From positions 62,001 to 126,000 of the IMG/VR virus record IMGVR_UViG_3300042934_000594: a stretch of DNA of 64,000 bases. One strand, given 5' to 3'. Below the pieces are notes generated by a model. It ran no database searches. It was not told where the DNA came from and was given only the letters and a program-made list of their open reading frames with translations. Of this stretch, positions 1,770-28,060 are shown in pieces. The position numbers and the translations under genes were made by a program. Position 1 is the first letter of the stretch. Every line of letters begins with the position of its first letter.

Positions 1770-2525
1770 TTATTGTGGTACCAGTTCGAGTAAAGGCCGC
1801 CAGTTAAGGGTGGCTGAATTTACAGCCGCGCTGGTGAAGTACAAAGGTCCCGTGCCCCCGCGTAGCACGGCAGCACCACCTGCCGTGAGTTCCTGACAGA
1901 CGCTAGGAACCGTTAACCCCAGTTCGGCGTTACTGAAGTTCGCCCAGCGGCTGGCCTGCCCTAGGGAGGTGGTGATCGGGTTAAACAAACTGTTCCACTC
2001 ACTGCCCTTAGCTACAGAGGGGTCGTTGACATTACCCCCCAGCAGGTAGTTCAGCGCTTGAATAGGATCCTCGATAGCGCCTTTGATCAGACGCACCTTG
2101 TAAGCGATACCCTGGATCTGAATCACCGCATTGCCCACCACCAGCATCAAGCCCTTAAGCTGGTCTCGAGTCAGTCCGCTGCGGATAGGTTGTTTGGCCA
2201 TGAACACAATGCGACCTGCCAAGTTAAACTTGAGCCAGTTGGTCTGCTCATTGATCAACGTGCCCGCAGTCAATCCCACCTTAGCGCACAGGGCTGTGGC
2301 CGAGATCAATTGCTCATGCGGGACTTCTCCATAGTAACCGTACAGTTCAGTGCCGCCCAGCAGCGTGGGGTTGGGCCCGACCGCCCGTCTGATTTGAAGT
2401 TCAAATCCCCCTAAAGACATGCCATCGTAGATACGTAACGTCTTGTCATCCACATTAAAGGCCAGTTCGCCTGACTGGCCCATGTAGTCGTTACATTCTT
2501 TCCGTGACCCACGCTTGATACGCAT
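1770..2525 (-). CDS. Virion/tail-associated protein, tandem paralog of 1031..1741
   Basis: KRGS...GELAFNVDDKTLRIYDGMSLGGF; YYGEV, WLKF, YKVRLIKG, GSEWNSL, WRPLLE; GGAGG RBS. Confidence 0.78.
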   Translation of the reverse strand: MRIKRGSRKECNDYMGQSGELAFNVDDKTLRIYDGMSLGGFELQIRRAVGPNPTLLGGTELYGYYGEVPHEQLISATALCAKVGLTAGTLINEQTNWLKFNLAGRIVFMAKQPIRSGLTRDQLKGLMLVVGNAVIQIQGIAYKVRLIKGAIEDPIQALNYLLGGNVNDPSVAKGSEWNSLFNPITTSLGQASRWANFSNAELGLTVPSVCQELTAGGAAVLRGGTGPLYFTSAAVNSATLNWRPLLELVPQ

Positions 2526-3333: not shown

Positions 3334-3431
3334 TGTAACGTCCTCTGAGGGCTCTACACGGCGTTTTAGCCGGAAGTTATACTAAGACACCGGATTATAT
3401 GCGAAACCCCTCCTGCGTGATCTTAAAGAGT

Positions 3432-3454
3432 TTTAAACCTAGATCATTCAGGTA
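3432..3454 (+). promoter_or_regulatory. Putative early (virion-RNAP) promoter, degenerate copy
   Basis: TTTAAAC-CTAGATCAT-TCAG-GTA matches the local consensus TT-N5-CTATATCAY-N4-GTG with 2 mismatches. Confidence 0.5.
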
Positions 3455-3479
3455 GAGTAAGCGAAATGAGTACAAAACC

Positions 3480-3830
3480 ATGATCCGTACCCGATACACC
3501 ACGACCTGCTGGGTGTTCGACATTGATCGGGCCATCCAGAGTCTGGGGGAGCCTCCTTTAGCCGATACCACGGAGCGGACGTACCGCGAATTCATTATCG
3601 ATGGTTTCGTTAAACATACCATCTCGCGTTTTGACTGGGTCAGTGTGCGCAATCACTACCCGGTGCACTTTAGCCACGAAGTGGTGCAGTGGTTTGAACA
3701 ACAGACCATTGCCATCCAAGAACTGTATCAAGCCGTGCGTTTTCGTCCCGAGGACGCAGGGTCTCAGGTTTTCATTCATCGCATGGCGTCAACAATCTGG
3801 GTGTTTGTCCCCCAATTGAGTTTGACCTAA
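3480..3830 (+). CDS. Hypothetical protein, member of small-domain array
   Basis: 116-aa ORF; N-term strand WVFDIDRA, C-term hairpin VFIHRMASTIWVFV. Confidence 0.7.
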   Translation: MIRTRYTTTCWVFDIDRAIQSLGEPPLADTTERTYREFIIDGFVKHTISRFDWVSVRNHYPVHFSHEVVQWFEQQTIAIQELYQAVRFRPEDAGSQVFIHRMASTIWVFVPQLSLT

Positions 3831-3844
3831 AAACGGAGCAGGCA

Positions 3845-4894
3845 ATGAGCAATTTATTTGTAGTGCTGGACGTACGTGGATTGGCACTACAGTTGGGCCG
3901 CATCAGTAAGGCCTTTGCCGATCACCACAACCAACACCCATTGAAGATTGCAGGACATTCTGAGGCGCGCATGGCCGCGCACATGAAGTACACCCCGCTG
4001 ATCCCGATGAGCGAAGCGGTGGCCACCCAGTACGTTAAGTACATGGTGCAAGACACGGTGGAATCCTCCGTGGCCTATAAAAAGGCTGAGGAGAAAACCC
4101 GTCGTCTGGCGGCACTGATGTTCAACATGCCGCTGGAAGCGGTGGACTTTGTGCACGAGCAATACGCACACGAGTTCAGTGAGTGTGAGGAAGTCACCCA
4201 GGTGTTCATGGAGCTGATCACCCAGGTCGGCAACCACATCGGGGAAAACGTGTGGGTGGAGTGGGACGTCTACGCCAACTACAACATGATCGCCCTGATC
4301 CGCGGCCGAGACTTCCGCATCACCGAATACGAGCGCCTGACCAACACCCGTCCGGACTATCACCACTTTGTGGAGATTGACCTGTCGAACATGGCGCACT
4401 ACATCAAGCAAATGATGCAGGATACTCTAGGCCCACAAGCCGGTCTGGTGAACCTGACTCCAATTCTGCAAGATGCATTCATGCGTCGGTACCCGCGCAT
4501 GGTGTTCGACACTGCCCTGCCGTCCAAGCTCAATGATGCAGCCTACGACTTTGGTGGCGAGAAGAGCATCAACTACGAGATCCTGGGGGCGTTGAACATC
4601 CACAACTACGAGGAGTTCTACGACCACTTCATCTCCACCGTGTTCGATTTCATGAACGTCACCAAGCTCACAGCGCGACTGGACCAGCGCACGCATTACA
4701 CCGCCAGCATCGGCAAGGACTGGGTGATTGCTATTGACCCAAGCCTTGAAGCTGAAGCCAAACCACCGTTGAGTGAACTTGAAGAACTGGCCCTGTCCTA
4801 CCTGGCGGGTGATCGCCTACCAGAGCGGGATCGTCAGCGTGCCGAAGCGTTCATCCAAGAACGCGACAGTCGCCTGTCCAGCAAAGGGCAATAA
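3845..4894 (+). CDS. Hypothetical protein, probably two copies of the array domain
   Basis: 349 aa, GGAG RBS; FVVLDVRGL at the N-term and FVEIDLSNM at mid-protein. Confidence 0.85.
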   Translation: MSNLFVVLDVRGLALQLGRISKAFADHHNQHPLKIAGHSEARMAAHMKYTPLIPMSEAVATQYVKYMVQDTVESSVAYKKAEEKTRRLAALMFNMPLEAVDFVHEQYAHEFSECEEVTQVFMELITQVGNHIGENVWVEWDVYANYNMIALIRGRDFRITEYERLTNTRPDYHHFVEIDLSNMAHYIKQMMQDTLGPQAGLVNLTPILQDAFMRRYPRMVFDTALPSKLNDAAYDFGGEKSINYEILGALNIHNYEEFYDHFISTVFDFMNVTKLTARLDQRTHYTASIGKDWVIAIDPSLEAEAKPPLSELEELALSYLAGDRLPERDRQRAEAFIQERDSRLSSKGQ

Positions 4895-4898
4895 ACAG

Positions 4899-4928
4899 AC
4901 CCCCTCCCTGCGGAGGGGGTTTATATCC
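4899..4928 (+). terminator. Hairpin terminator/attenuator
   Basis: ACCCCCTCC-CTGC-GGAGGGGGT then TTATATCC. Confidence 0.6.
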
Positions 4929-4942
4929 TCTAGGGCATCACC

Positions 4943-5389
4943 ATGTCACCACAACCCTACAGCGTTATGCAAAACCCCAGTCAAACTGTGGCCGTGATCA
5001 TGAAGCGCCGTGACCTGATCACGAACGAGTTTGAGCACCTGGAGTTGATGGCCCTCTACCAGGAACCGGAGCGTTACTTCGGTGTGATCGGCCGTCTGGC
5101 GTGCGCCGTGGCAGAACTGCACTTAAAAACCCCCGAGGCTGTCAACGACAAATTGACCTGGACGTTAATGCTCATGCTCAACTACGTCACCGACACGTTG
5201 AGTGACGGCATGGAGGTGGGCCGCAATACCCAGCGGCTGTTGGAAATTAACCGACGTCACGTAATAGAATGTGCTCGCAACATGGCGCGCCTTATGCCCA
5301 GTGGCGTTTGGTCAGATTTCCATTTCCAGCAAGCCAATACCGAATCGGTGATTTACACAGGTACCCTGCATGCAGTCGATTATCGCTAA
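4943..5389 (+). CDS. Hypothetical protein, array member
   Basis: 148 aa, overlaps the next gene. Confidence 0.7.
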   Translation: MSPQPYSVMQNPSQTVAVIMKRRDLITNEFEHLELMALYQEPERYFGVIGRLACAVAELHLKTPEAVNDKLTWTLMLMLNYVTDTLSDGMEVGRNTQRLLEINRRHVIECARNMARLMPSGVWSDFHFQQANTESVIYTGTLHAVDYR

Positions 5390-5765
5390 GCACTACACCC
5401 AGACCGGTGCAGTGATGGTCGTCCCGTTAGACGACCTATTCGGTCCCGAACACACCGCGTTCGAGATCGGTAAGAGAATAGGCTATGACCGCGGACACAT
5501 CACCAAGGTCATGGTGGGAATAGCGGATTCCATGTTAGGCAACGACCTGACCCCTGAACACGCCTGGAGTTATTGTCAGGTTCAACTGCACATCCCCAAG
5601 TCACCGCGTCAGTGGAAACACCACATGGTCAATGCGATCTATGACGCCGCCCGGAAGTTAGCCGGTTGGACACCCGACAACACCTTTGACCTGTTGTATT
5701 GTCGCACCACTCACCACTGCGTGTACGTTTACGCCCGTTTGAATCGAGAGGTTCCCAATGAATGA
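5370..5765 (+). CDS. Hypothetical protein, array member
   Basis: 131 aa; VMVVPLDDL / LLYCRTTHHCVYVYARL. Confidence 0.7.
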   Translation: MQSIIAKHYTQTGAVMVVPLDDLFGPEHTAFEIGKRIGYDRGHITKVMVGIADSMLGNDLTPEHAWSYCQVQLHIPKSPRQWKHHMVNAIYDAARKLAGWTPDNTFDLLYCRTTHHCVYVYARLNREVPNE

Positions 5766-6357
5766 CATGGACAATGCTGAACTCCCCAGCGAGCTCAAGC
5801 ATTATGAGGACATCCAAGACGATTTCCTGCCCATGATCAAGGGCATCGTCGATCGAGCCCGTGACGAGTACTACCGCGAGAAAGAAAAAGAGCCGTACCA
5901 GGCAGTGAACCTGTGGCCACCTGGGGCCGGCCGGTTCATGATGGTGTTCAAACTGGACGACCTGGGGGTGGACTACACCGACGTCAGCTTTCATTACCGC
6001 ATGGCGTTGGCTGAATCCTCTCGCGGGTATGCACAGCCTCAATCCGCGGTACGGGCTAAGGCTGAGACCTATGCCGAAGCGTACTTGATGCGCCTGGTGA
6101 CCAATGTGGTGCAGACCATCCTGGAACTGGAAGAGAACGACCCTGAGAATGCTTCGGACTACGTCTACATTGCTCGGGACATCATGCGCCCGTTGCAGGA
6201 GTACGAAGAGTTCGAGATGCTGATTGGGCGTGTGGCTGACATGGCCACCAGCGTGCGTTCACGGTTACCTGACGGCGTCACGTATGTGCACTACATCGGT
6301 AACTACCGGGAACGGTTGGCGTACATCTTTGCAGGGCAAACCCCGCTGGAGGAATGA
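5758..6357 (+). CDS. Hypothetical protein, array member
   Basis: 199 aa, GAGG RBS; MMVFKLDDL / VHYIGNYRERLAYIF. Confidence 0.78.
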   Translation: MNDMDNAELPSELKHYEDIQDDFLPMIKGIVDRARDEYYREKEKEPYQAVNLWPPGAGRFMMVFKLDDLGVDYTDVSFHYRMALAESSRGYAQPQSAVRAKAETYAEAYLMRLVTNVVQTILELEENDPENASDYVYIARDIMRPLQEYEEFEMLIGRVADMATSVRSRLPDGVTYVHYIGNYRERLAYIFAGQTPLEE

Positions 6358-6806
6358 TGCACCAGACTCACACGCTCACCCCCACCGTGGGGGTGCTCAC
6401 CGTGGACTTCGCCGCCTTAGGGTTTCACATCGAGGCCTTGGCCAACCGCCATTGGGAACTGATGAACCAAACGGTGCGTCAGACCAACCCCGAACAGGCG
6501 GTACCTGAGTTCATGTCGTTTGTGGTCAACTGTGCAACCCACTTTGACAACTACCGGCAGAACCCCAGTGTGGCTCAGGATTTCCTGACCACCGAACTGT
6601 TTGAGCTCTATGATGCGGACATAGACGCCACCACCCATATCCAACAGGTTCGGGAAGTGGTGACCAAGGTGTTGGCGATGATGCCCTCTACCTGCTATTG
6701 CAGTCGCCTGGTAGGGGTGCGTGGCAGCCTTGCGTTTATCTTTCTCGACCACGAGTCGGAGGCAACCCAGTATGCCCGCGAAACAGCCGCCCAATCCGGG
6801 GCTTAA
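6354..6806 (+). CDS. Hypothetical protein, array member
   Basis: 150 aa, ATGA overlap, GGAGG RBS; VLTVDFAAL / RLVGVRGSLAFIFLD. Confidence 0.75.
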   Translation: MMHQTHTLTPTVGVLTVDFAALGFHIEALANRHWELMNQTVRQTNPEQAVPEFMSFVVNCATHFDNYRQNPSVAQDFLTTELFELYDADIDATTHIQQVREVVTKVLAMMPSTCYCSRLVGVRGSLAFIFLDHESEATQYARETAAQSGA

Positions 6807-7248
6807 GATCCATCAGCGCCTGGAGGATGATTACACCGCCATCCTGGTGATTGACGTCCCTAAGTTGTCGCAGTGGTTTGAACAAGCCGAACCGATCTTC
6901 ATCGACCAGATCCAAACCGAACTGAACTCCACGCGCGGTAACAACTTGAACGCCAAGGATTCGTGGATTCATACGGCGATCATGGAGATCTACCAAATCG
7001 CCGAAGTGTTCATGGAACGGGAGTTATCCGGTGAATCGGTGGAGTTTGACGAGGTAGTGGGGGAGTATACCCGATTCTATCGCTCCCCTTACATGCAGCA
7101 TCCGGCTTTGAAACGCTGGCTGATGGATGCTGGGTACCAACTGTACCTGCTCTACCCCACCGGCACGATGCACACCCAGATAGTGATCTACCGCCATGGC
7201 TTGCTATACGTATACGTTGACACGCAAGACCCCTACAAACCTCTCTAG
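6772..7248 (+). CDS. Hypothetical protein, array member
   Basis: ATG 6772 with GGAGG upstream; ILVIDVPKL / QIVIYRHGLLYVYVD. Confidence 0.72.
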   Translation: MPAKQPPNPGLKIHQRLEDDYTAILVIDVPKLSQWFEQAEPIFIDQIQTELNSTRGNNLNAKDSWIHTAIMEIYQIAEVFMERELSGESVEFDEVVGEYTRFYRSPYMQHPALKRWLMDAGYQLYLLYPTGTMHTQIVIYRHGLLYVYVDTQDPYKPL

Positions 7249-7258
7249 AGCTCCCACA

Positions 7259-7744
7259 ATGATTGGCTTTATTGCGTTGCCTGCCCGATACCTGGTAGCG
7301 CAGTTAACTCATCACGACGACCCACGTCTGGTGAGTGCCTGCGTGAATGGGTTTTTCAGTGCGTGTGTGATTGCGGCTCGCTACAACCACAACGACATGC
7401 ATTGGGAACAGCTGTTTGATGAGCACACTCAGTCCTACTTCAACCTGGGTGCTGAGATGTTCGATGAGACCACCCAAGACTATTACCTTCAACATGTCGT
7501 CGCCAGCGGCCAGTTTAAGGTGGTGGACCACCACACCGGTCGTACAGACATACACAGCTGGTATGGCCGGTACAAAGAACTCGTGGATTCGTTGAATAAG
7601 TACTACAGACACGATGTTATAGCACTGATCCGCAAGGTCAACGAAACGGGCAGTGTAACGTCGCTACGCTACATCAACCACGACGCCTCCATTATCCACG
7701 TGGAGGTCAACTACAATTTACTGATCGGACACGAAGGAGGTTGA
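7259..7744 (+). CDS. Hypothetical protein, array member
   Basis: ATG 7259; FIALPARYL / LRYINHDASIIHVEV. Confidence 0.72.
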   Translation: MIGFIALPARYLVAQLTHHDDPRLVSACVNGFFSACVIAARYNHNDMHWEQLFDEHTQSYFNLGAEMFDETTQDYYLQHVVASGQFKVVDHHTGRTDIHSWYGRYKELVDSLNKYYRHDVIALIRKVNETGSVTSLRYINHDASIIHVEVNYNLLIGHEGG

Positions 7745-8208
7745 TGATGCGCATTGCAGTAATGGTGGATGTTGAGCGCATCCAACCGGGCCTTAAAAAG
7801 ATGTCCGACCTGATCACTGCTCACGGGGCCCGTCTGGGAATTCCGACTGAGGAGAATGATGATCTAGGGAATCTGATGGTGATGGGCGACATGGTGAACC
7901 ACCATTTGGCCACTTGCCTCACAGACAGGAACCCAACGGCCAACATTGGCATCGATGGGTACCTTCAAGATTACTACCCTCGCGTAGCACCGGCACTGCT
8001 TCAATCGCCGGAGGTGCTGAGTTTCATGGGTAGTCAATTTGCACAAGTGATCGGAGTGCTTGCCGAATCACTGCAACCTGCGGTGCACCGCCTGGGCGAA
8101 GTTGACCAGTGCGTAGATGAAATCGTGGCCTATGGTGTCAAACCTGGAGAGCTTGCGCTCTACATGGTAGACGGGGAACCATGGGACACAGGCACCGTAG
8201 AGTGTTGA
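7741..8208 (+). CDS. Hypothetical protein, array member
   Basis: AAGGAGG RBS (start 7741, 7744 or 7747); IAVMVDVERI / IVAYGVKPGELALYMV. Confidence 0.75.
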   Translation: MMMRIAVMVDVERIQPGLKKMSDLITAHGARLGIPTEENDDLGNLMVMGDMVNHHLATCLTDRNPTANIGIDGYLQDYYPRVAPALLQSPEVLSFMGSQFAQVIGVLAESLQPAVHRLGEVDQCVDEIVAYGVKPGELALYMVDGEPWDTGTVEC

Positions 8209-8211
8209 CTA

Positions 8212-8242
8212 AGCCCGCGCCCTTGGTGCGGGCTCTATGTCC
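8212..8242 (+). terminator. Hairpin with TATGTCC tail
   Basis: AGCCCGCGC-CCTTG-GTGCGGGCT then CTATGTCC. Confidence 0.6.
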
Positions 8243-8590
8243 AAAAGCACACAGTGGGTTTCGCTAAAGCGCGATTGGCGAACCCCACCGGTACGATACG
8301 GGGGATACGCTAACACGTCCTGAACCCACCTCACTTAGCAATCGCCCGCCATGGATCTGCACGGAACTGTACAACTTCCATTTATGAACATCCGCGAACC
8401 CTCTGCGAGTAGGGATGACTTCAAGGTTGTTGTGCAGGGCGCACGTAGTGCCATGAGTGCCAAAAGTGTGACTTATCTATTAGTCTTCGATGACGTTTAT
8501 CGAGTGCCTTATCAGGGAACAGGTCGTCAACCGTTCTCTCCGACGATGGATCACACACGGCGGGTAGTAACTGTGGTTTAGGAGTACAAC

Positions 8591-8965
8591 GTGAAAAGCA
8601 AAGCCGTCGTTATCGTATCGGAAGAGCTGAAACATCAGGTTATCGAGCATATTCGCCTGCATTATGGTGATGTCGTAATGGACCTGGAACACCGTCAGAA
8701 GATCCAGCGTGAGTTGTCTGCCATGTACACAGCAATGTGGCACGGAGAGTACTTGGAAACAGCTGGCACAGATGACGCTATAGAAGACGAAGACGATGAT
8801 GAACTTAAACCGTTCTTTGCCGTACTTCGCGCACTTGACCTGGAGCTGATGGAACACCATGCGAATAACTTGGTAAACCTCATCATCCCAATGGACCTCA
8901 AAGGTACGGTGATGATGATCATAACCGAACTTGACGAGAATGAAACACATGACCACGATCAATGA
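8591..8965 (+). CDS. Hypothetical protein, probable array member
   Basis: GTG with AGGAG RBS; AVVIVSEEL / LIIPMDLKGTVMMII. Confidence 0.75.
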   Translation: MKSKAVVIVSEELKHQVIEHIRLHYGDVVMDLEHRQKIQRELSAMYTAMWHGEYLETAGTDDAIEDEDDDELKPFFAVLRALDLELMEHHANNLVNLIIPMDLKGTVMMIITELDENETHDHDQ

Positions 8966-9362
8966 CATCGCCATCGGCCAACGCTTCAGCTTCGAAACCT
9001 ACTCCCCTGGTCGCCTCGGTAATGGCTTCCAGGACGTCCGTCTCGAAGGTGTCATGTCGGCCCAAATGGCAGCCAACTTTGGCGTCGATATCTACGCACT
9101 GCACCAAAACGTGTACGCCTCGCTTCCTCAAGGCACACCTAATGACCCCACCCAGTATGGTTGGGTCCGTTTCGCCACGCAGTCGGGCGAATATCAGATC
9201 ATCGGCATCCCTTACATCCGCCCAGAAAGCATCATGCTCTCGACCGGCGGTACGTTCAACCTGGTTTTCCAAAACAAAACCGACACCGACCTGCAACGCA
9301 TCATGACCGCACTGTCGGCTAACGGGTACGCCCCGGACGCTGTCAATCGGGCCATGGCGTGA
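8949..9362 (+). CDS. Conserved protein (phiKZ gp49-like)
   Basis: FSFETY..LG..F..V, DIYALHQNVYASLPQGTPNDP and IGIPYI motifs; immediately upstream of the DNA polymerase. Confidence 0.75.
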   Translation: MTTINDIAIGQRFSFETYSPGRLGNGFQDVRLEGVMSAQMAANFGVDIYALHQNVYASLPQGTPNDPTQYGWVRFATQSGEYQIIGIPYIRPESIMLSTGGTFNLVFQNKTDTDLQRIMTALSANGYAPDAVNRAMA

Positions 9363-9418: not shown

Positions 9419-9448
9419 AGAGCCTCCTTCGGGAGGCTCTCTTTTTTT
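9419..9448 (+). terminator. Rho-independent terminator
   Basis: AGAGCCTCC-TTCG-GGAGGCTCT + CTTTTTTT. Confidence 0.85.
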
Positions 9449-15432: not shown

Positions 15433-17325
15433 ATGGCAATCGAAGATAGCGAAAACGGCACCACCCAACAGCCACAGGGCAACCAGCAGTCCAACGCTGG
15501 TCAACAGCCACAAGGCGGCGCATACGCCGGTGGTTTCAACGCACAACAGCAGCCACAGGCCAACCCAGGTCTGGGTAGCCTGAACCGTTTGCTGCAACGT
15601 TCGGGTAACTTCGATGGTTCCGAAGGCCGTAGCGCCGAAGCCGTCAAAGCCCTGACCGAAGTCGGTAAGAAAGCCGTTGACGCACAGACCCTGTCTGGCG
15701 ACTACGAGCTGGTTCGTTTCGACCGCGAAGCCAACCGCGTGGGTATCAGCGCTCTGCTGGTGATGAAGACCGTCAAGAACGCCGGTAAAGTGTTTGCCAT
15801 CGTGCGTCCATTGCTGCTGAGCACCGACGCCGTCAAACTCAAGCCTCGCGTCCTGCAACTGGGCCACGAGCGCATCGAAGTGCCGGCGCGTCCTCAAGAC
15901 GTCTACAACGACACCTACTGGACTCGCATCACCGAGTTCCTGGGCCGCAAGATCGGCATCGCCGACCTGCAAGTTGCTGACGCCGGTCCTCTGGACATCC
16001 CATCCGACTTCTCCTTCCAGGACGAAGGCAAAGTGGCCGAGCTGTTGATCCAGTCCGTGAACCGTTGCGACGACGTCAAGGGCAAGATCATCGGCGAGCA
16101 GCCGTTCACCGTTCAGGCAGTCAAGACCGCTGACGAATACCTGTCGGCTCGTCTGGACTTCAGCGCCCTGCCTCAGGTTGACCTGGTCGGTCACCCAGTG
16201 CGTAGCGACATCGTCGTTACCATGAACCGCGGCAACAAGACCAACCAGGCGGCTGAGCAGGACTTCTACGACGCCGAGACCAGCTTCAACAGCGTCTCCG
16301 GTTTCGTGAACCTGGAATACACCCCGCCACAGCAGCAGCAAATGCCACAGTGGGGTCAGCCTCCTGTGACTCAGCTGTTCACCCCGACCTTCGTGATCAC
16401 TCAGGTCAAGCAGGCTCCGTGGATCCAGGCGAACACCCTGGAGCTGTACATGCTGGCCATCAGCAACGCCTACCGCGTTACTGCCGGTACTTCGTGGGCT
16501 CGCGCTTTCCTCCCAGGTCTGGGTGCGAAGAACGATCCGCGTGACATCGGCGCGCTGGGCTACATGGCTGGTCAGAATGGTGCTGCGGGCCAGAAGATCA
16601 AGACCAAGGGCGAAAGCTTCAAGGACAGCGATTTCGTTGAACTGATGACCACTCTGGTCAAGCCGAACCCGACCTTCCTGATCGACGTCAACCCGCTGGG
16701 CGAAAACGCAGCGATCGAGAACATCCTTATCGACGCGGCCGGTGGCGTGAACTCCGACAAGGCAACGACTGCGCTGGTACTGGCAGCCAACCGCCTGACC
16801 GGTAACAAGTTCAGCGACTTCTTCGACCACACCAAGTTCAAGATCTGCGTGCCGTACGGCGTAGACGTGCACCTGGGCTACTACATCGACGAACACAGCG
16901 AGAAGCGCGACATCCGCGACCTCGACGTGCTGGCGATGCTGAACGCCACTCAGGGCAACGTGCAGGAGTTCATGAACTGGTACCGCACCATGTGCGACAC
17001 CACCATCCTGAACGAACTGCGTCTGAAGCAGCGTGAAGGCTTCGAGCGTCAGTACCTGGCAAACAACCTGGTCATCACTGGCCGTGGTACTCGCCTGTTG
17101 CTGACTCCTCAGTTCATCGAAGCATTGGACAAGTCTACCCAGGCTGCCGGCGTCAACGTCAGCATGGAAAACCTGACCACCGTCTTCGGTGCACAGCGCT
17201 TCGCCGGCAACCAGCTGGTCGGTCAGTACGCCGTTTCGGGTGCTGCGTCGATGAACCTGGCGGGCCAAAACCAACAGAACACCTACACCACCGGTGCAGT
17301 GACTTCTGGCGGTCGCATTTACTAA
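15433..17325 (+). CDS. chmA: Chimallin, major phage-nucleus shell protein (phiKZ gp54-like)
   Basis: 630 aa; QDVYNDTYW, GHPVRSD, VSGFVNLEY, WARAFLP, DIGAL, RDIRDLDVLAMLN and GAQRFAGN motifs; strong highly-expressed codon bias; directly upstream of the nvRNAP beta' gene. Confidence 0.92.
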   Translation: MAIEDSENGTTQQPQGNQQSNAGQQPQGGAYAGGFNAQQQPQANPGLGSLNRLLQRSGNFDGSEGRSAEAVKALTEVGKKAVDAQTLSGDYELVRFDREANRVGISALLVMKTVKNAGKVFAIVRPLLLSTDAVKLKPRVLQLGHERIEVPARPQDVYNDTYWTRITEFLGRKIGIADLQVADAGPLDIPSDFSFQDEGKVAELLIQSVNRCDDVKGKIIGEQPFTVQAVKTADEYLSARLDFSALPQVDLVGHPVRSDIVVTMNRGNKTNQAAEQDFYDAETSFNSVSGFVNLEYTPPQQQQMPQWGQPPVTQLFTPTFVITQVKQAPWIQANTLELYMLAISNAYRVTAGTSWARAFLPGLGAKNDPRDIGALGYMAGQNGAAGQKIKTKGESFKDSDFVELMTTLVKPNPTFLIDVNPLGENAAIENILIDAAGGVNSDKATTALVLAANRLTGNKFSDFFDHTKFKICVPYGVDVHLGYYIDEHSEKRDIRDLDVLAMLNATQGNVQEFMNWYRTMCDTTILNELRLKQREGFERQYLANNLVITGRGTRLLLTPQFIEALDKSTQAAGVNVSMENLTTVFGAQRFAGNQLVGQYAVSGAASMNLAGQNQQNTYTTGAVTSGGRIY

Positions 17326-17341
17326 GTACGACTGTGGTTAG

Positions 17342-17371
17342 AGAGAGCCCCTGCGGGGGCTCTCTTTTTTT
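17342..17371 (+). terminator. Rho-independent terminator after chmA
   Basis: AGAGAGCCCC-TGCG-GGGGCTCTCT + T6. Confidence 0.85.
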
Positions 17372-17398
17372 GTCCTGCAACCAAGGAGGCAACTGTCC

Positions 17399-18850
17399 AT
17401 GGGCATTCACGCTCAGCTGGTCGACTTCGATGCCGAGTTCGCCAAGCTCTCGTATGAGCCAGTGCTGGTCAACGACTTCGACACCAGTATTGCCGAACAG
17501 AAAGAAGAGTTCGAGCGCCATCTGTATTCGCATTACAAGGACTCTGAATCCATTGAAGATTCGGCGTCGTGTGATTGCAGGCACACCAAAACCGTGCAGT
17601 TGCTCGGGGTGGTGTGTGAGTTGTGTGGCACCCCGGTGGTCAGCACCACCGATCGCCCAATCGTTCCGAGCATGTGGATCGCAGCGCCTGATGGTGTGAA
17701 GGGTCTGGTGTCCCCGGAAGTGTGGATCATGTTGGAAACGGCCTTGAGCGTTAAGGAGTTTAACTTCTTAGAGTTCCTGACCAACACCACGTATCGTTAC
17801 GACCTGGATCACATCACGTCTAAAGAGACGCGGCGTAAGCTGGATCGTTTGCTGGCCAAGAACTTCCCCCGTGGCCTGAACAACTTCATCACCAACTTTG
17901 ATGAGATTGTTGAGTTCCTGTTCAGCGCAAACATCATCGACACCAACAAGAATGACCTGTACCAGTTCATTCAGCGTAACAAGCATCTGTTCTTCCCCAA
18001 GTACCTGCCGATCCCCTCGAAGATTTGTTTCGTGGTGGAATCGACCACCTCCGGCGTCTACATCGACAAACCTATTGCAGCAGCTATTGATGCGGCCTTG
18101 ACTATTGTCTCGATCCGCAGCACCGCTTATGCCCTCAAGCCCGCGGTAGTTCAGAACCGGGTGGTGAAGTCGCTCAAGTCGTTGGCGTTGTTCCATGAAG
18201 TCTACGACCGTACCCGTCTGGCCCGTAAGCCTGGGTTGTTCCGTCGACACGTGTTTGGCAGTCGTTTGCACTTCACCGCCCGTGGCGTGATCACCAGTAT
18301 CTCCGATCCACACGAGTACGATGAGCTGCATGTACCGTGGGGTATTGCGACACAGTTGCTCAAGTACCACTTGGTCAACAAGCTGATGAAGCGTGGCCGT
18401 ACAGCGTCTGAAGCGCTGGCGTTTGTGTACAGCCACGTGCTGCGGTATAACGAAGAGCTCGATGAGATCTTCAAGGAGCTGATTGCCGAAGCCCCTGAGA
18501 AAGGCATCGCGGTCACGTTGCACCGGAACCCAACGTTGCAGCGCGGTTCCACGCAACTGTTCTACGTCACGCGAATCAAACCGCGCGTCAGTGACAACAC
18601 CATCGGCATGTCCGTGATCTGTCTGCGGGCACCGAACGCTGACTTCGACGGCGACCAGTTGAACATGACTCTGATCCTCGACAACGAGTTGACGAACGCC
18701 ATGAAACGACTGGCCCCACATCTGTGGGTGATGTCGTTGGAAGAACCGCACGAAATCTCAGGTAACCTGGAACTCCAGGGTCCTGTAGTGGAAACGGTGG
18801 TCAACTGGTTGCACGAAGATTACCTTCCACCGCTACAAGTCGCCTCGTGA
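17399..18850 (+). CDS. Non-virion RNA polymerase beta' N-terminal/catalytic subunit (phiKZ gp55-56.1-like)
   Basis: CDC...CELC zinc finger, KPGLFRRHVFGSR, HRNPTL, catalytic APNADFDGDQ. Confidence 0.93.
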   Translation: MGIHAQLVDFDAEFAKLSYEPVLVNDFDTSIAEQKEEFERHLYSHYKDSESIEDSASCDCRHTKTVQLLGVVCELCGTPVVSTTDRPIVPSMWIAAPDGVKGLVSPEVWIMLETALSVKEFNFLEFLTNTTYRYDLDHITSKETRRKLDRLLAKNFPRGLNNFITNFDEIVEFLFSANIIDTNKNDLYQFIQRNKHLFFPKYLPIPSKICFVVESTTSGVYIDKPIAAAIDAALTIVSIRSTAYALKPAVVQNRVVKSLKSLALFHEVYDRTRLARKPGLFRRHVFGSRLHFTARGVITSISDPHEYDELHVPWGIATQLLKYHLVNKLMKRGRTASEALAFVYSHVLRYNEELDEIFKELIAEAPEKGIAVTLHRNPTLQRGSTQLFYVTRIKPRVSDNTIGMSVICLRAPNADFDGDQLNMTLILDNELTNAMKRLAPHLWVMSLEEPHEISGNLELQGPVVETVVNWLHEDYLPPLQVAS

Positions 18851-18857
18851 GGTAAGT

Positions 18858-19469
18858 ATGTCAGGCTATGCGTCCGGCGTGGACATCATTGATATCTTCG
18901 CAGGCGGTCATCTGGACCAACAATCCAGTGGCTGGCTCCAGGAACAATCCCAGTTCATGTCGACTGGGTTGAGCCATACCGCTCAACAGTTCTTCGAGCA
19001 AGCGCGTAACATGTATCAGGTCATCAGTCAGACTGATGCCTTGCAAGTGATACGCAACGTTAAAGCGAAGGTGGGTAGTCTGTGGGGGAACGACGTCTTC
19101 GCGGCGACGACCCTGCCACAGATTCAAACTGCCAACCCGGTCATGCAGCGATGGATCATGGCATTGCCAGAGCTGCGGACCATGTACCTGAACCAGGAAG
19201 TCGAAGGCTATGGGGATTCGTATCAGAACTTCCATGGCCACGCAGTCGGTGCGGACCACTACGATTGGCGCCAAGTGATGACCGATGTGGTCGTCGTCAA
19301 ACCCAATGAATGGGGCTACACCAACTACTGTGAACCCACCAGCCCTGGAGAGAAGCCGCTCACACTACATGAGAAGGTGGACATCCTGGCCACGTGGAAC
19401 GCAGTCAAGCACTATCTGGATGAGGCGGATGAAGATCCAACCTCAACCTGTGGTGCCAAACTCGGCTAA
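18858..19469 (+). CDS. Conserved protein (phiKZ gp59/Imp3-like by synteny)
   Basis: QTANPVMQRWIMA.P, EGYGDSY, HYDWRQV and DPTS motifs; GAGG RBS. Confidence 0.7.
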   Translation: MSGYASGVDIIDIFAGGHLDQQSSGWLQEQSQFMSTGLSHTAQQFFEQARNMYQVISQTDALQVIRNVKAKVGSLWGNDVFAATTLPQIQTANPVMQRWIMALPELRTMYLNQEVEGYGDSYQNFHGHAVGADHYDWRQVMTDVVVVKPNEWGYTNYCEPTSPGEKPLTLHEKVDILATWNAVKHYLDEADEDPTSTCGAKLG

Positions 19470-19475
19470 ATCCCC

Positions 19476-19512
19476 CGACATAGAGGCCCCCGGAAAGGGG
19501 CCTCGCTTTATG
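19476..19512. terminator. Hairpin with CGACATA flank
   Basis: CGACATA-GAGGCCCC-CGGAAA-GGGGCCTC-GCTTTATG. Confidence 0.7.
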
Positions 19513-19523
19513 GAGTCTCGACC

Positions 19524-20303
19524 ATGGATGCAGAATCTTTAAAGGCCCTGATGTGGACTGCTCTCCGTGCTGAAGGGGAGGGTGTCGTAGCCACAGGCCA
19601 CACAGGCCCCCTGCCCGACGTGCGTGGCGGACTACTCATCGAAGGCGCTGATTTAACAGTGGCTGCCCACAACCTCGGTGTGGCCAATGGCATCAAAGCA
19701 CTCTTGACCCACATGAGCCAAAATGGCTGGCGTTTGGTTGGGCCTCTGGATCCTAAGATCTACCCACCTCGCGATGGCGATCTGGGCGAGGAATTCAAAA
19801 CCTGGCTGAACACCCCCCTGCCTTCGGAAAGCAACCAAGACCGGCAACTGACCGGTGCCCGTGGATGGAAGGATGGCGTTTACAACCCGGCCCTTCCACC
19901 ATCCAAACATGCCCTGCTGCCCGACCTGCCTGAAATCAAAGGCGTCCACCTTAAAGACAGTAGCTCAGTTACCCGTACTCGGTTCAAACAGACCGTGCTG
20001 TTTATGAAAGACGGGCGGGTCCACCTGAATGGCGTCCCCATCAAGTTCTCGGTGAAAGCTGCTGACTGGCAGGTGCAATCAGGGTACAGTGAGTATCCAC
20101 TGGAAATCCGTTTCCAGGTGGACGGCAAGACTTACGTGGTTTCTGAGTCATTGGGGACACCGTATGTGGATCGCTTGATGTTGGACTATAGTGACCAGGT
20201 GGAGGACCCTGATCCAGGAACGACGTACGAAGAGCCTGTGGCGTCAGTGGTGATCAGTCAATACCACGGCGTGCTGCAATGGCTGGTGCAGGATATCGAG
20301 TGA
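19524..20303 (+). CDS. Hypothetical protein (259 aa)
   Basis: GGAG RBS; flanked by terminators. Confidence 0.7.
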   Translation: MDAESLKALMWTALRAEGEGVVATGHTGPLPDVRGGLLIEGADLTVAAHNLGVANGIKALLTHMSQNGWRLVGPLDPKIYPPRDGDLGEEFKTWLNTPLPSESNQDRQLTGARGWKDGVYNPALPPSKHALLPDLPEIKGVHLKDSSSVTRTRFKQTVLFMKDGRVHLNGVPIKFSVKAADWQVQSGYSEYPLEIRFQVDGKTYVVSESLGTPYVDRLMLDYSDQVEDPDPGTTYEEPVASVVISQYHGVLQWLVQDIE

Positions 20304-20313
20304 TACAACCCAT

Positions 20314-20355
20314 CAGGGGGCCTTCGGGTCCCCTGTGGATTCCCTTTCTTTTTTG
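20314..20355 (+). terminator. Rho-independent terminator
   Basis: CAGGGGGCC-TTCG-GGTCCCCTG followed by a T-rich run. Confidence 0.6.
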
Positions 20356-20395
20356 CCAATAGGATGACTTCCTACCACCTGGCGGCGAACCTCCT

Positions 20396-20803
20396 ATGCC
20401 CACGACAAAGATTGCCACCCTCGGTTCCATCGGTTGGGTGGACTCCATTCCAGAGAAAGGCGACTACGCCATTTCCTGCTTTATCACCACCAATAAATCC
20501 CAGTCGGTTGAGTACGCTGGTAATATTACTTCCCTTCAATATCTAGTGAAGACCTATGCCAACGCCCCGCGGGATCTGGAGACGAATGTCCGAACCGCGT
20601 TGGAACGAACGATGTCGCAGTACTTCGGCGCAGACGTCGCCCAAGTAACCTGCACCGTTGAGTTGGATACCGACGATATTACCAAAATCACCATCCGCTT
20701 CCGCTGCGTGCTGACCATCGATGGCAGCAACTATGTCCTTGGACGTATTGTGCAGTATGTGAACGGTCGGTTGGTGGCCATTGCCAAAGACAACAACGGG
20801 TAG
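20396..20803 (+). CDS. Conserved Chimalliviridae protein (phiKZ gp61/62 region; possibly gp25-like fold)
   Basis: TLGSIGWV..EK.D..., SQS...GNITSLQYL motifs. Confidence 0.65.
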   Translation: MPTTKIATLGSIGWVDSIPEKGDYAISCFITTNKSQSVEYAGNITSLQYLVKTYANAPRDLETNVRTALERTMSQYFGADVAQVTCTVELDTDDITKITIRFRCVLTIDGSNYVLGRIVQYVNGRLVAIAKDNNG

Positions 20804-20808
20804 ACCCA

Positions 20809-21246: not shown

Positions 21247-21257
21247 CCGGTGGTGAT

Positions 21258-22965: not shown

Positions 22966-22976
22966 AGGTTGTCACT

Positions 22977-23816: not shown

Positions 23817-23921
23817 ACCCCCTAGGAAACAAATACTCATGACCTTAATGGTACATGAGCAGTCTACACGGACATGTCGTTAGAGCATATGTCCTCCACC
23901 ACAGTAAAAGCGGAGCTACAC

Positions 23922-24695: not shown

Positions 24696-24703
24696 GCATT
24701 ACT

Positions 24704-24734: not shown

Positions 24735-24754
24735 CTCAGCGCAATCGAAGGTTT

Positions 24755-26428: not shown

Positions 26429-28060
26429 ATGCAATTTTCATACGGTACCCAGAACACTGAACTCGGTGTAGGTTTGTTTCTGTTGTCTCAGACTGGGACG
26501 TATCAGAACCAGAACCTGCGTCCATTCGGGGTGACGGTCAACAGCAACACCCTGACCAAGTTGGATGAAGCCACCCGTGGCGGCACCAACATCGGCATCA
26601 GTGCAATGCAGCGTGTGGCCAACGACATCATTGCGCCTTCGGCAATGCCCGAAGGTGAAGTGGCGATCATCAATGGTTGGCGCTGCCGCCGGTTCCGCTT
26701 CATGCTCAAGGTGATTGAACGGCACCCGTTCATGAATGGCATGACCACTCAACGCATCTTCTTCGGTGTGACGGACAACTGCGATGCCTCGCAGAACTTC
26801 CTCGACCCGAACATGCGCATTTACTTCAACTCCGAAACGGTGGTCACCGAAACCCTCACACCAACTGCGAACGGTCCGATCAAGGAAGTCATGGTCACCG
26901 GTTCCAACCAGATCGTTTCACCGATTGAATACCAAGCGGCTTCGAATGCGTCGTTGTACACCAATCCGACCGCACACCTGGTGCGTCCGGAAGACCTGTT
27001 CAGCATCGGGCAGTCGCAAGCAGTGGTTGATACCCTCAACCGTCAGGGCGCCATCCCAGGTGGCGTGGACCTGATCCTGGATTCGCGCACCATGGTCGGC
27101 CAAGGCGGTTCGTACAAGTACTCGGCTCGCCGGGATACCAGTCCGACCCGATTCTTGCATGATACCCTGGATGCGTTCAAGCATGCACGGATGGAAGCAG
27201 CGCTGACTCAGAATCTGGATCATAGCCAACCAATCGGCAAGGAACACCTGTACCTGGAAGCGCAGTCTTACGCCACCAACCAAGACATCCACAGCAATGG
27301 CTTCTTTGCCATGCTCAAAGATCGTTGCGGTTTCATGGAAAAGGGCTACGTTACCTTTGGCGACCTGGCGCAATGCTTCCCTGAGATCTTGCGCTATAAA
27401 GAAGTCACGCACTTCTCGGTCAACGACGGCCCGTCCGTTCGTAAGGTCAACCACGCTGAAGAAGCACAACACTGGAACGGCTCGGACCCTGCAACGATTG
27501 CCGCCAGCTTGTTGGCGCAGGTCATTCCGGCGGCGATGATGGACAACTACATCCGAAACGTGTCCTTCGCGGCCACCAACGGTCAAGGTCCTAATCGCTA
27601 TGCCATCCAGATCCATGATCAGCAAACACGTTCGGTCATCGACGGGGTGAACATGGTGCCGTACCTGCAAGCGTTCATGCACCGCCTGCAAGTGGACGTG
27701 CTGGGGGTGATCAGCCAAGGCAATCAGATCCCGTTCAACATCTCCATGCTGTCTGACCTGGCCGGCGACTCGGTCATCGATATCCGCATCGGTGCCGATG
27801 CCGTGACCCGATTCGTAGCGCCGACCTGTACGGACAGTCTGTTCAGTCCTGTGATCACCCGCCGCAGTGATTTGTTGACCAACATGGCCAATGACTTGCT
27901 GTATCTGGTTGATCAAGCAATCCCACAAAGCGCGGTCTCCAACGGTGCGTCAGTGACCAGCCTGGATACCATGAGCAATGCCTATCAACCGGTGCAGGTA
28001 CCACAGTCTGCGAACGTGACGCCGGTCCCGTTCAACGTCAACGATTACGGCCTGCTGTAA
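26429..28060 (+). CDS. picA: Phage-nucleus protein import factor PicA/Imp1 (phiKZ gp69-like)
   Basis: 543 aa; TGTY..Q.LRPF, IINGW...RFRF, LDPNMRIYFNS, RPEDLF and P...DSLFSPV motifs; immediately after the gp68-like gene. Confidence 0.8.
   Translation: MQFSYGTQNTELGVGLFLLSQTGTYQNQNLRPFGVTVNSNTLTKLDEATRGGTNIGISAMQRVANDIIAPSAMPEGEVAIINGWRCRRFRFMLKVIERHPFMNGMTTQRIFFGVTDNCDASQNFLDPNMRIYFNSETVVTETLTPTANGPIKEVMVTGSNQIVSPIEYQAASNASLYTNPTAHLVRPEDLFSIGQSQAVVDTLNRQGAIPGGVDLILDSRTMVGQGGSYKYSARRDTSPTRFLHDTLDAFKHARMEAALTQNLDHSQPIGKEHLYLEAQSYATNQDIHSNGFFAMLKDRCGFMEKGYVTFGDLAQCFPEILRYKEVTHFSVNDGPSVRKVNHAEEAQHWNGSDPATIAASLLAQVIPAAMMDNYIRNVSFAATNGQGPNRYAIQIHDQQTRSVIDGVNMVPYLQAFMHRLQVDVLGVISQGNQIPFNISMLSDLAGDSVIDIRIGADAVTRFVAPTCTDSLFSPVITRRSDLLTNMANDLLYLVDQAIPQSAVSNGASVTSLDTMSNAYQPVQVPQSANVTPVPFNVNDYGLL

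What the first reader, a model, noticed from the sequence alone, without database searches (positions are those of the whole stretch)
3480..8965. Hidden tandem array of about 11 extremely diverged copies of one small alpha/beta domain
Seen: ten co-oriented, mostly overlapping ORFs with no obvious pairwise identity share one layout. Each has an N-terminal hydrophobic strand, often with D or P before a helix (WVFDIDRA, FVVLDVRGL, FVEIDLSNM, VAVIMKRRDL, VMVVPLDDL, MMVFKLDDL, VLTVDFAAL, ILVIDVPKL, FIALPARYL, IAVMVDVERI, AVVIVSEEL). About 80-110 helical residues follow, then a C-terminal beta-hairpin (FIHRMASTIWVFV, LLYCRTTHHCVYVY, RLVGVRGSLAFIFL, QIVIYRHGLLYVYV, LRYINHDASIIHVEV, LIIPMDLKGTVMMII). 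The 349-aa ORF appears to hold two units. The block starts behind an early-promoter motif. Established, from recall: accessory nuclear-import factors of phiKZ (gp47/gp48) map to this same gp42-gp49 interval. Inference: this is a paralog family or hetero-oligomer acting as a diversified adaptor set, for example cargo adaptors for PicA-dependent import or host-takeover binders.
Basis: partly seen in the sequence, partly recalled or inferred. Interest (0 to 1): 0.7.

Follow-up and report, generated by a model that had tools for sequence, protein, structure and literature searches.

The report
Tandem family of phage-nucleus import adaptors
A nucleus-forming jumbo phage carries ten back-to-back small genes, most of which appear to be very diverged copies of one phage-specific protein domain; two of them match known adaptors that carry proteins into the phage nucleus, so the rest are candidate adaptors.

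Summary
The window comes from a 269-kb phiKZ-like (chimallivirus) contig. Region 3480-8965 is the syntenic counterpart of phiKZ gp42.1-gp48. It lies between gp42 (DUF7484) and the SH3DP/DNA-polymerase pair. All ten + strand ORFs score as coding and are under purifying selection.

o9 (7741-8208) is the Imp2/gp47 ortholog. o10 (8591-8965) is the Imp4/gp48 ortholog. o2 is the gp43 ortholog.

o2 contains this layout twice. The two models find each other's families in BFVD. They find nothing in PDB, AFDB clusters or the ESM Atlas.

Iterative profiles unite o4-o7 as one family, with no decoy included. o3 joins through hhalign. o1 is linked only through models of its orthologs. o8 and o10 are linked weakly, with TM below 0.4.

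Relatives show fresh tandem duplicates and a recombinant, hypervariable core.

A predicted complex of the Imp1 ortholog with o9 passed its controls (ipSAE 0.76 against 0.00). Its interface is centred on the residue equivalent to phiKZ Imp1 I226, where a mutation blocks Imp2 import.

The early-promoter claim was not verified.

The parts
3334..3479 (.). Divergent intergenic region between the gp42 ortholog (minus strand) and o1. Likely regulatory, function not shown.
   Evidence: Highly conserved across L077, L079, L082 and L084, and partly in L026. Its motifs do not recur in the window above chance.
3480..3830 (+). o1, 116 aa. Ortholog of the unnamed phiKZ gene between gp42 and gp43 (fnug_53); PHROG 18018.
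   Evidence: phmmer E 2.3e-11 to L002:6559-6987. PHROG E 7.9e-13. The o1-family orthologs 201phi2-1 gp074 (B3FK49) and Psa21 gp038 (A0A481W4N2) are Foldseek hits of the o2 model, prob 0.80 and 0.47, TM 0.45 and 0.41.
3845..4894 (+). o2, 349 aa. gp43 ortholog (PHROG 14023). Two strand-helices-hairpin units (about residues 1-166 and 171-305) plus a two-helix tail.
   Evidence: PHROG E 2.6e-41. tblastn to phiKZ-like gp43. AF2 pLDDT 83.2 and secondary structure. Foldseek hits five Imp2 orthologs at prob 0.66-1.0.
4899..4920 (.). GC-rich hairpin between o2 and o3.
   Evidence: Terminator-like scan. Function not shown.
4943..5389 (+). o3, 148 aa. Occupies the gp44-slot family. This family is tandemly duplicated in Noxifer (gp037/038), L033 and L035.
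   Evidence: phmmer hits. hhalign o3-o4 prob 61-76%, E 2.4e-5 to 7.9e-5, 108 columns.
5370..5765 (+). o4, 131 aa. Member of the sequence-defined family o4-o7.
   Evidence: Iterative HMM. hhalign o4-o5p prob 81%, E 1.2e-5. Alignment A9.
5758..6357 (+). o5, 199 aa. Family member with an N-terminal extension of about 45-58 residues that relatives lack.
   Evidence: Homologs P0003-P0005. 37-44% identity to orthologs. o5-o5p hhalign prob 99.2%.
6354..6806 (+). o6, 150 aa. Fastest-diverging family member.
   Evidence: Only 27-29% identity to its positional orthologs. No other homolog found. Included by the iterative HMM.
6772..7248 (+). o7, 158 aa, with the start revised from the GTG at 6721 to the ATG at 6772. 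Family member.
   Evidence: Ortholog alignment begins at residue 21 of the long ORF. Iterative HMM.
7259..7744 (+). o8, 161 aa, with the start revised from 7196. gp46-family ortholog (PHROG 26237 in phiKZ).
   Evidence: phmmer to L026, phiPA3 and phiKZ. The iterated family includes L002:9162-9596. Structural link to o9 is weak: Noxifer gp040, prob 0.57, TM 0.33/0.31.
7741..8208 (+). o9, 155 aa. Imp2 (phiKZ gp47) ortholog.
   Evidence: PHROG 17816 E 9.8e-21. phmmer E 6.6e-13 to phiKZ gp47. AF2 pLDDT 90.6. Top Foldseek hit is phiPA3 gp044. Predicted complex with Imp1.
8211..8236 (+). Hairpin directly after o9.
   Evidence: Read from the sequence. An equivalent hairpin is present in relatives.
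8470..8485 (+). Invariant 16-nt motif GACTTATCTATTAGTC upstream of o10.
   Evidence: Identical in the window, L077, L079 and L082. Unique in the window. Function unknown.
8591..8965 (+). o10, 124 aa. Imp4 (phiKZ gp48) family ortholog.
   Evidence: gp48-family profile hits o10 at E 5e-8. Positional orthology. This family is tandemly duplicated in L019 and L023. Structural link to o9 is weak: Psa21 gp044, prob 0.28.
8949..9362 (+). o11, gp49 ortholog with an SH3DP domain. Downstream boundary gene, not a family member.
   Evidence: Pfam PF20287 E 2.7e-38. No hhalign link to any array family.
9419..9440 (+). Intrinsic-terminator-like hairpin with a T-run after o11.
26429..28060 (+). Imp1/PicA (phiKZ gp69) ortholog, 543 aa. 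Predicted docking partner of o9.
   Evidence: 47% identity to phiKZ gp69. Complex prediction.

Best explanation
The region is this phage's version of the phiKZ gp42.1-gp48 block. It holds ten translationally coupled genes encoding eleven copies of a domain found so far only in phiKZ-related jumbo phages; the gp43 ortholog carries two copies. The domain has one N-terminal strand, a bundle of 4-6 helices and a C-terminal beta-hairpin.

The block grows and changes by tandem duplication, fast divergence and recombination.

Two members are orthologs of the cargo-specific import adaptors Imp2 (o9) and Imp4 (o10).

The most likely mechanism is this. Each member docks through its small beta-sheet edge (N-terminal strand plus hairpin) onto Imp1/PicA at the nuclear shell. 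Its variable helical face holds a particular cargo. The set as a whole then decides which proteins enter the phage nucleus.

Shown here: synteny and orthology; coding status; homology among o3-o7; a shared predicted fold for o2, o9 and the o1 family.

Inferred: homology of o8 and o10 with the rest; adaptor function for any member other than o9 and o10; the docking mode, which rests on one in-silico complex.
For: Synteny and orthology:
- Synteny with phiKZ and Noxifer.
- o9 to gp47, E 6.6e-13. The gp48-family profile hits o10 at E 5e-8.
- orf47 is imp2 and orf48 is imp4; both are cargo-specific adaptors. Both lack disruptive transposon insertions in phiKZ.

Fold:
- AF2 layouts.
- Reciprocal Foldseek hits: the o9 model hits Psa21 gp039, a gp43 ortholog, at prob 0.89. 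The o2 model hits phiPA3 gp044 and four other Imp2 orthologs at prob 0.66-1.0, and o1-family proteins at prob 0.80 and 0.47. Accessions were verified.
- All 15 named non-orthologous BFVD hits of o9 with prob >= 0.5 come from phiKZ-related jumbo phages.

Sequence:
- An iterative HMM started from o5/o5p converges on o4-o7: 38 sequences, with none of about 800 off-frame decoy ORFs.
- hhalign o3-o4, prob 61-76%.
- The Noxifer gp039 family matches this superfamily at prob 63%, E 6.8e-5, over 112 columns. Noxifer gp039 is itself a Foldseek hit of o9, prob 0.91, TM 0.44/0.54.

Dynamics:
- Recent tandem pairs occur in seven relatives.
- An extra o5 paralog is present in L079, L082, L084 and L085.
- L084 and L085 are 99-100% identical except in o3 (65%), o4 (86%), o5p (77%) and o5 (93%).

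Docking:
- Imp1 ortholog plus o9: ipSAE 0.76, best of 3 controls 0.00. That mark was reached by 58 of 80 solved complexes and 2 of 110 mismatched pairs. The runs agree in at least 50% of contacts and the partner's pLDDT is at least 80.
- Imp1 residues 213-220 pair with o9 residues 4-10.
- Window Imp1 I216 aligns with phiKZ I226, and I226T was selected on EcoRI-Imp2.
- The only invariant Imp2-family residue, L111, lies in the interface.
- No solved structure of either family exists that the model could have memorised.
Against: - There is no sequence-level link between o1, o2, o8, o9 or o10 and anything else. The two halves of o2 do not match each other.
- PHROGs keeps gp43-gp48 as separate families.
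- Cross-family TM-scores are only 0.39-0.57. For the gp46 and Imp4 families they are 0.26-0.33.
- Only two of the ten proteins were modelled. BFVD target models are of unknown quality.
- One of the three complex runs scored 0.15. My own unpaired alignments were used, so the calibration holds only roughly.
- The other reported Imp2-related imp1 alleles (G88D/R90H, A270D) map outside the listed contacts.
- No member other than Imp2 and Imp4 has a published import phenotype.
Confidence: 0.6

Rival explanations
1. The block is a mixed set. Only o3-o7 are true paralogs. o1, o2, o8, o9 and o10 are unrelated small proteins that share a simple strand-helices-hairpin arrangement by convergence or by chance.
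For: No profile-profile signal beyond o3-o7. PHROGs splits them. Cross-family TM-scores are borderline, and below 0.4 for the gp46 and Imp4 families.
Against: The o9 and o2 models find each other's families with high Foldseek probability. The fold is absent from PDB, AFDB and the Atlas but abundant in phiKZ-related phages. Array neighbours from non-orthologous slots appear in the top 50 of a library of several hundred thousand models. Tandem duplication is observed in several slots, including the Imp4 slot.
Confidence: 0.25
2. The uncharacterised members (o1-o8) are host-takeover or anti-defence effectors rather than import adaptors. They share ancestry with Imp2 and Imp4 but not function.
For: The core is hypervariable and recombinant, and copy number changes between near-identical phages. 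This is typical of loci in conflict with the host. Genetic selections in phiKZ recovered only orf47 and orf48 from this block.
Against: All genes are under purifying selection, with no gene-wide excess of replacement changes. The only functional data for the family concern import. Those selections queried only a handful of cargos.
Confidence: 0.2
3. The proteins are subunits of one hetero-oligomeric machine, kept together and translationally coupled for stoichiometry.
For: Tight coupling with overlapping stops and starts. The order is conserved across relatives.
Against: Copy number varies (6 to 11 small genes between gp43 and gp49 in different phages). Members evolve at very different rates. 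Hairpins split the block into at least three units. No interaction among members was tested.
Confidence: 0.1

Closest known systems
[quoted passage not shown]
   Same: o9 is its sequence ortholog. It sits in the same slot. Its model superposes on BFVD models of Imp2 orthologs at TM 0.79-0.88. It is predicted to dock on the Imp1 ortholog at the residue equivalent to phiKZ I226.
   Different: Only 27% identical to phiKZ gp47. Cargo and import were not tested. The host and an Nlp1 counterpart were not identified.
Imp4 (phiKZ gp48), needed for import of host TopA
   Same: o10 matches the gp48-family profile at E 5e-8 and occupies the slot just upstream of gp49.
   Different: Direct pairwise similarity to phiKZ gp48 is not significant. 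Structural likeness to the Imp2 fold is weak (prob 0.28). No functional test was made.
phiKZ gp43 family (PHROG 14023), function unknown
   Same: o2 is a full-length ortholog.
   Different: Here it is read as a tandem fusion of two Imp2-like units plus a helical tail. I found no published statement of this.
Other paralogous gene families of phiKZ (head proteins gp92-97/153/162/163; baseplate gp131-135)
   Same: These are also multi-copy diverged families within one jumbo phage.
   Different: Those are virion proteins recognised by sequence and Pfam. This family is non-virion and tandem, and most of it can be recognised only by structure.
Eukaryotic importin-alpha/beta adaptor logic
   Same: Works like: a common docking partner at the compartment boundary, plus cargo-specific adaptors.
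   Different: No homology or fold similarity. This is an analogy only, drawn from general knowledge.

Membership tests
Imp2 (phiKZ gp47 family) | Sequence homology to phiKZ gp47 / PHROG 17816 | tested here: met
   o9: PHROG E 9.8e-21; phmmer E 6.6e-13 to L002:9593-10129.
Imp2 (phiKZ gp47 family) | Position between the gp46 and gp48 orthologs, upstream of gp49/gp50 | tested here: met
Imp2 (phiKZ gp47 family) | Depends on, or contacts, a specific Imp1 interface | tested here: inconclusive
   In-silico only. ipSAE 0.76 against controls 0.00; that mark was reached by 58 of 80 solved and 2 of 110 mismatched pairs. The interface includes the I226 equivalent. Other imp1 alleles lie outside the listed contacts.
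Imp2 (phiKZ gp47 family) | Required for Nlp1 import and is itself imported | not testable with these tools
   Needs infection experiments.
Imp4 (phiKZ gp48 family) | Sequence homology to the gp48 family | tested here: met
   The profile of 23 gp48-slot proteins hits o10 at E 5e-8. Single-sequence searches are marginal, E 6e-4 to 3e-3.
Imp4 (phiKZ gp48 family) | Required for TopA import | not testable with these tools
   Needs infection experiments.
   Met for o2 unit 1, o2 unit 2 and o9. Supported by alignment for o4-o7. Not modelled for o1, o3, o8 and o10.
   o9 against a gp43 ortholog: 0.43. o2 against Imp2 orthologs: 0.27-0.43 (normalised by target). o2 against the o1 family: 0.41-0.45. o9 against Noxifer gp039: 0.44/0.54. 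o9 against the gp46 family: 0.33/0.31. o9 against the Imp4 family: 0.26/0.29.
   Met for o4-o7 and for o3-o4. Not met for o1, o2, o8, o9 and o10.
Chimallivirus (nucleus-forming phiKZ-like phage) | Encodes chimallin, Imp1, Imp3, Imp6 and the divergent DNA polymerase | tested here: met
   ChmA 15433-17325, Imp3 18858-19469, Imp6 23874-24695, Imp1 26429-28060. divDNApol E 4e-283.

The most novel reading that the evidence does not exclude
The whole gp42.1-gp48 block of phiKZ-like phages is one fast-diversifying repertoire of Imp1-docking cargo adaptors. A conserved beta-sheet edge (N-terminal strand plus hairpin) adds onto a conserved Imp1 strand (window residues 213-220). The variable helical face selects the cargo. 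Duplication, loss and recombination of cassettes retune which phage and host proteins enter the nucleus.
Probability: 0.3. Interest if true: 0.8.

Novelty: new variant of a known kind. Interest (0 to 1): 0.62.

Why it matters
How a protein shell without known pores selects its cargo is an open question for nucleus-forming phages. Published genetics names Imp1 as the hub and Imp2, Imp4 and Imp5 as isolated, cargo-specific helpers with no recognised family.

If Imp2 and Imp4 are two members of a tandem family, each phage has 6-11 further candidate adaptors.

The predicted Imp1-Imp2 strand pairing also gives a concrete interface to mutate.

The hypervariable core of the array could explain how nuclear content changes between closely related phages.

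Tried and rejected
- Pairwise BLASTP among the ORFs: nothing significant.
- Pfam: no family for any of the ten.
- PHROGs: four separate unknown-function families.
- Megablast against phages: no match.
- First shallow hhalign rounds: no cross-family signal.
- ESM Atlas look-up of o5: low-confidence model (pLDDT 0.42) and meaningless neighbours.
- Word-based homolog search for o6: only itself.
- The 812-aa hit P0006 of the o5 search is a low-complexity repeat protein and was set aside as spurious.
- hhalign of o2 N-half against C-half, and of each half against all families: background.
- The merged o4-o7 profile against o1, o2, o8, o9 and o10: background.
- Promoter idea: conserved upstream motifs are not repeated in the window, and sigma-70-type matches are at or below chance.
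- Rfam on the 8150-8650 gap: nothing.
- The search for related loci with Imp1: no pattern match. I used the genome search on known records instead.
- The metagenome scan with the gp49 alignment added few usable loci.
- Mapping the RSL2 Foldseek hit (177 aa) to its array failed, because no annotated gene there has that length.
- The Noxifer hit A0A1Y0SV41 (136 aa) is not array gene gp038.
- Literature: I found no statement that gp43-gp48 are paralogs.

Full report
WHAT THE WINDOW IS

The window is bases 62001-126000 of a 269-kb IMG/VR virus record, at about 55% GC. It has no near-identical phage in GenBank. It is nevertheless a phiKZ-like, nucleus-forming jumbo phage. It encodes the divergent family-B DNA polymerase (PF20286, E 4e-283). 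It also encodes chimallin, Imp3, Imp6 and Imp1/PicA orthologs at 41-49% identity to phiKZ. The closest cultured relatives by polymerase are phiPA3, Psa21, phiKZ, Phabio and Noxifer, at 53-58% identity.

THE OBSERVATION

Ten + strand ORFs fill 3480-8965. I call them o1 to o10:

| Name | Coordinates | Note |
|---|---|---|
| o1 | 3480-3830 | |
| o2 | 3845-4894 | |
| o3 | 4943-5389 | |
| o4 | 5370-5765 | |
| o5 | 5758-6357 | |
| o6 | 6354-6806 | |
| o7 | 6772-7248 | start revised |
| o8 | 7259-7744 | start revised |
| o9 | 7741-8208 | |
| o10 | 8591-8965 | |

- All have a positive codon-usage score in their own frame, the best of six frames, with high GC3. The long antisense ORFs and the 76-aa ORF at 8351-8581 do not.
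- Closer relatives found through o5 and o2 homologs (L077, L079, L082, L084, L085) carry 1:1 orthologs of every gene.
- Pairwise dN/dS is 0.03-0.32. These are therefore real, constrained genes.
- The next gene, o11 (8949-9362), is the SH3DP protein that accompanies the polymerase. It is not part of the family.

ORTHOLOGY

The block is syntenic with phiKZ (record fnug) and Noxifer: gp42 (DUF7484, minus strand), an unnamed small gene, gp43, gp44-gp48, gp49, gp50.
- o1 matches the unnamed gene (E 2.3e-11).
- o2 matches gp43 (PHROG 14023, E 2.6e-41).
- o8 matches the gp46 family.
- o9 matches gp47 (PHROG 17816, E 9.8e-21; phmmer E 6.6e-13).
- o10 matches the gp48 family by profile (E 5e-8).

In phiKZ, orf47 is imp2, needed for Nlp1 import and itself imported. 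orf48 is imp4, needed for TopA import. Both lack disruptive transposon insertions.

IS IT ONE DOMAIN? STRUCTURE

I had two structure jobs.
- o9, with a 27-sequence alignment, gave pLDDT 90.6 and pTM 0.83. Its order is strand 4-10, helices 15-31, 41-60, 71-78, 83-87 and 90-120, then hairpin 123-134/138-147.
- o2, with 26 sequences, gave pLDDT 83.2. It contains this order twice (5-8 to 138-156, and 176-179 to 285-299), followed by two terminal helices.

Foldseek against BFVD gave the following.
- The o9 model finds seven Imp2 orthologs (E below 1e-9). A tail of hits follows at E 3e-3 to 0.1.
- All 15 named hits in that tail with probability >= 0.5 are from phiKZ-related jumbo phages of Erwinia, Ralstonia, Aeromonas, Klebsiella, Escherichia and Pseudomonas.
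- By exact-sequence look-up I confirmed four of these hits:
  - Psa21 gp039, a gp43 ortholog: prob 0.89.
  - Noxifer gp039, an array gene in the o4-o7 slot: prob 0.91, TM 0.44/0.54.
  - Noxifer gp040, gp46 family: prob 0.57, TM 0.33/0.31.
  - Psa21 gp044, Imp4 family: prob 0.28, TM 0.26/0.29.
- The o2 model in turn finds five Imp2 orthologs (prob 0.66-1.0). It also finds the o1-family proteins 201phi2-1 gp074 (prob 0.80, TM 0.45) and Psa21 gp038 (prob 0.47, TM 0.41).

In contrast, neither model has a credible match outside BFVD:
- PDB by Foldseek: best E 0.25.
- AFDB clusters: best TM 0.25.
- ESM Atlas: TM below 0.4.

The fold is therefore specific to this phage group. It links o1, o2 and o9.

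IS IT ONE DOMAIN? SEQUENCE

Direct BLASTP and shallow profiles show nothing. With the subclade orthologs added, signal appears.
- An iterative HMM seeded with o5 and its extra paralog o5p converges on the o4, o5, o6 and o7 families. It gathers 38 sequences, with none of about 800 off-frame decoy ORFs in the same database.
- hhalign gives o5p-o5 99%, o4-o5p 81% (E 1.2e-5), o3-o4 61-76%, and o4 against the phiPA3 gp040-type family 55-60%.
- The Noxifer gp039 family aligns to the o4-o7 profile over 112 columns (prob 63%, E 6.8e-5). This ties the sequence-defined group to the Imp2 fold through the Foldseek hit above.
- The alignment shows the shared hydrophobic N-terminal strand, an invariant Pro before the hairpin and the aromatic hairpin.
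- No profile signal joins o1, o2 (either half), o8, o9 or o10 to anything. PHROGs also keeps them apart.

HOW THE ARRAY EVOLVES

- Recognisable tandem pairs occur in several slots and phages:
  - the o3 slot in Noxifer gp037/038, L033 and L035
  - the o4 slot in L032
  - the Imp4 slot in L019 and L023
  - a pair in L026
  - the o5 slot in L079, L082, L084 and L085
- The number of small genes between gp43 and gp49 ranges from 4 to 9.
- Against its nearest relatives, the window's flanking genes are 59-73% identical. The central genes are much lower: o3 49-52%, o4 50-55%, o5 38-44%, o6 27-29%, o7 45-54%.
- L084 and L085 are 99-100% identical in eight genes but only 65-93% in o3, o4, o5p and o5. 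This points to cassette exchange by recombination.
- RSL2-type Ralstonia phages keep the same architecture: a protein of about 330 aa, six small genes, SH3DP, then the polymerase. The similarity to the window's families is positional, with only weak profile hints.

MECHANISM

I tested one binding claim: the Imp1 ortholog (543 aa) with o9.
- The score was ipSAE 0.76, the median of 0.15, 0.79 and 0.76. The best of 3 controls was 0.00.
- That mark was reached by 58 of 80 solved complexes and 2 of 110 mismatched pairs.
- The runs agree in at least 50% of contacts and the partner's pLDDT is at least 80.
- My own alignments were used, so these counts hold only roughly.

The interface has these features.
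- Imp1 residues 213-220 run along o9 residues 4-10, the N-terminal strand. There are further contacts to o9 residues 109-117 and to the hairpin.
- Window Imp1 I216 aligns with phiKZ I226. I226T is an imp1 allele selected on EcoRI-Imp2.
- The only invariant Imp2-family residue, L111, is in the interface.
- phiKZ Imp2 K45, whose K45N change blocks Nlp1 import, aligns with o9 K20 on helix 1, outside the interface. This fits a separate cargo face, but it is an inference.
- Other reported alleles (G88D/R90H, A270D) lie outside the listed contacts.
- Neither family has a solved structure.

The model supports binding but does not show it. Extending this docking mode to the other members is my inference.

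REGULATORY FEATURES

- The region upstream of o1 is conserved. I could not show it to be a promoter.
- Hairpins after o2 and after o9, and a terminator after o11, suggest sub-units o1-o2, o3-o9 and o10-o11.

VERDICT

- The paralog-family idea is well supported for o3-o7, reasonably supported for o1, o2 and o9, and open for o8 and o10.
- The adaptor interpretation is the best available reading. It rests on two orthologies and one prediction.
- I found no publication stating that Imp2 and Imp4 sit in a tandem family of one fold.

Noticed in passing
window 8209-8590: The gap between o9 and o10 is 382 nt here but about 150 nt in relatives. The window has roughly 230 extra bases that are not repeated elsewhere in the genome. 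The 76-aa ORF inside it (8351-8581) has no coding signal. An invariant 16-nt motif (8470-8485) and a conserved stretch before the o10 ribosome-binding site are shared with relatives.
   Followed up: partly
L084:4746-6651 versus L085:2688-4590: Two otherwise 99-100% identical phages differ strongly only in o3 (65%), o4 (86%), o5p (77%) and o5 (93%). This is a recombination mosaic confined to the centre of the array.
   Followed up: partly
L079:7001-7516; L082:9995-10486; L084:5640-6131; L085:3579-4070: These relatives carry an extra paralog of o5 directly upstream of the o5 ortholog. It is absent from the window and from L077.
   Followed up: yes
L002:8437-8889 (phiKZ-type phage fnug): An unannotated ORF overlaps the end of annotated gp44 and the start of annotated gp45. 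It is pulled in by the profile of the o4 family (seeded from 201phi2-1), but it has no PHROG. It may be a missed gene or a decayed copy.
   Followed up: partly
window 5758-5930: o5 has an acidic, probably helical N-terminal extension of about 45-58 residues that its orthologs lack.
   Followed up: no
window 3486-3575 and 4688-4786: The N-terminus of o1 (residues 3-32) resembles the hairpin region of the second unit of o2 (residues 282-314): 36% identity, E 6e-4 in a 12-sequence database. This hints at a shifted gene boundary or a partial duplication.
   Followed up: no
L058, L059, L060, L061, L057 (RSL2-type Ralstonia phages): These phages show the same architecture upstream of SH3DP and the polymerase: a 330-346-aa protein followed by six small genes. 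The first small gene matches the phiPA3 gp040-type family (prob 49%) and, weakly, the N-half of gp43 over 141 columns.
   Followed up: partly
window 1770-2525 (minus strand): A 251-aa protein next to the gp42 ortholog has a sub-threshold match to the Mtd_N domain (E 1e-4, below the Pfam cut-off).
   Followed up: no
window 15433-28060: The core nuclear genes lie downstream in the same window: chimallin (15433-17325), Imp3 (18858-19469), Imp6/ChmC (23874-24695), an nvRNAP subunit (24815-26404) and Imp1 (26429-28060).
   Followed up: partly
BFVD hits: Several distant jumbo phages contribute multiple different proteins of this fold. Examples are three Aeromonas phage D3 entries with near-consecutive accessions and five A0A7D3 entries. 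A Noxifer protein outside the array (A0A1Y0SV41) also appears. The family may therefore be multi-copy across the whole phage group.
   Followed up: no
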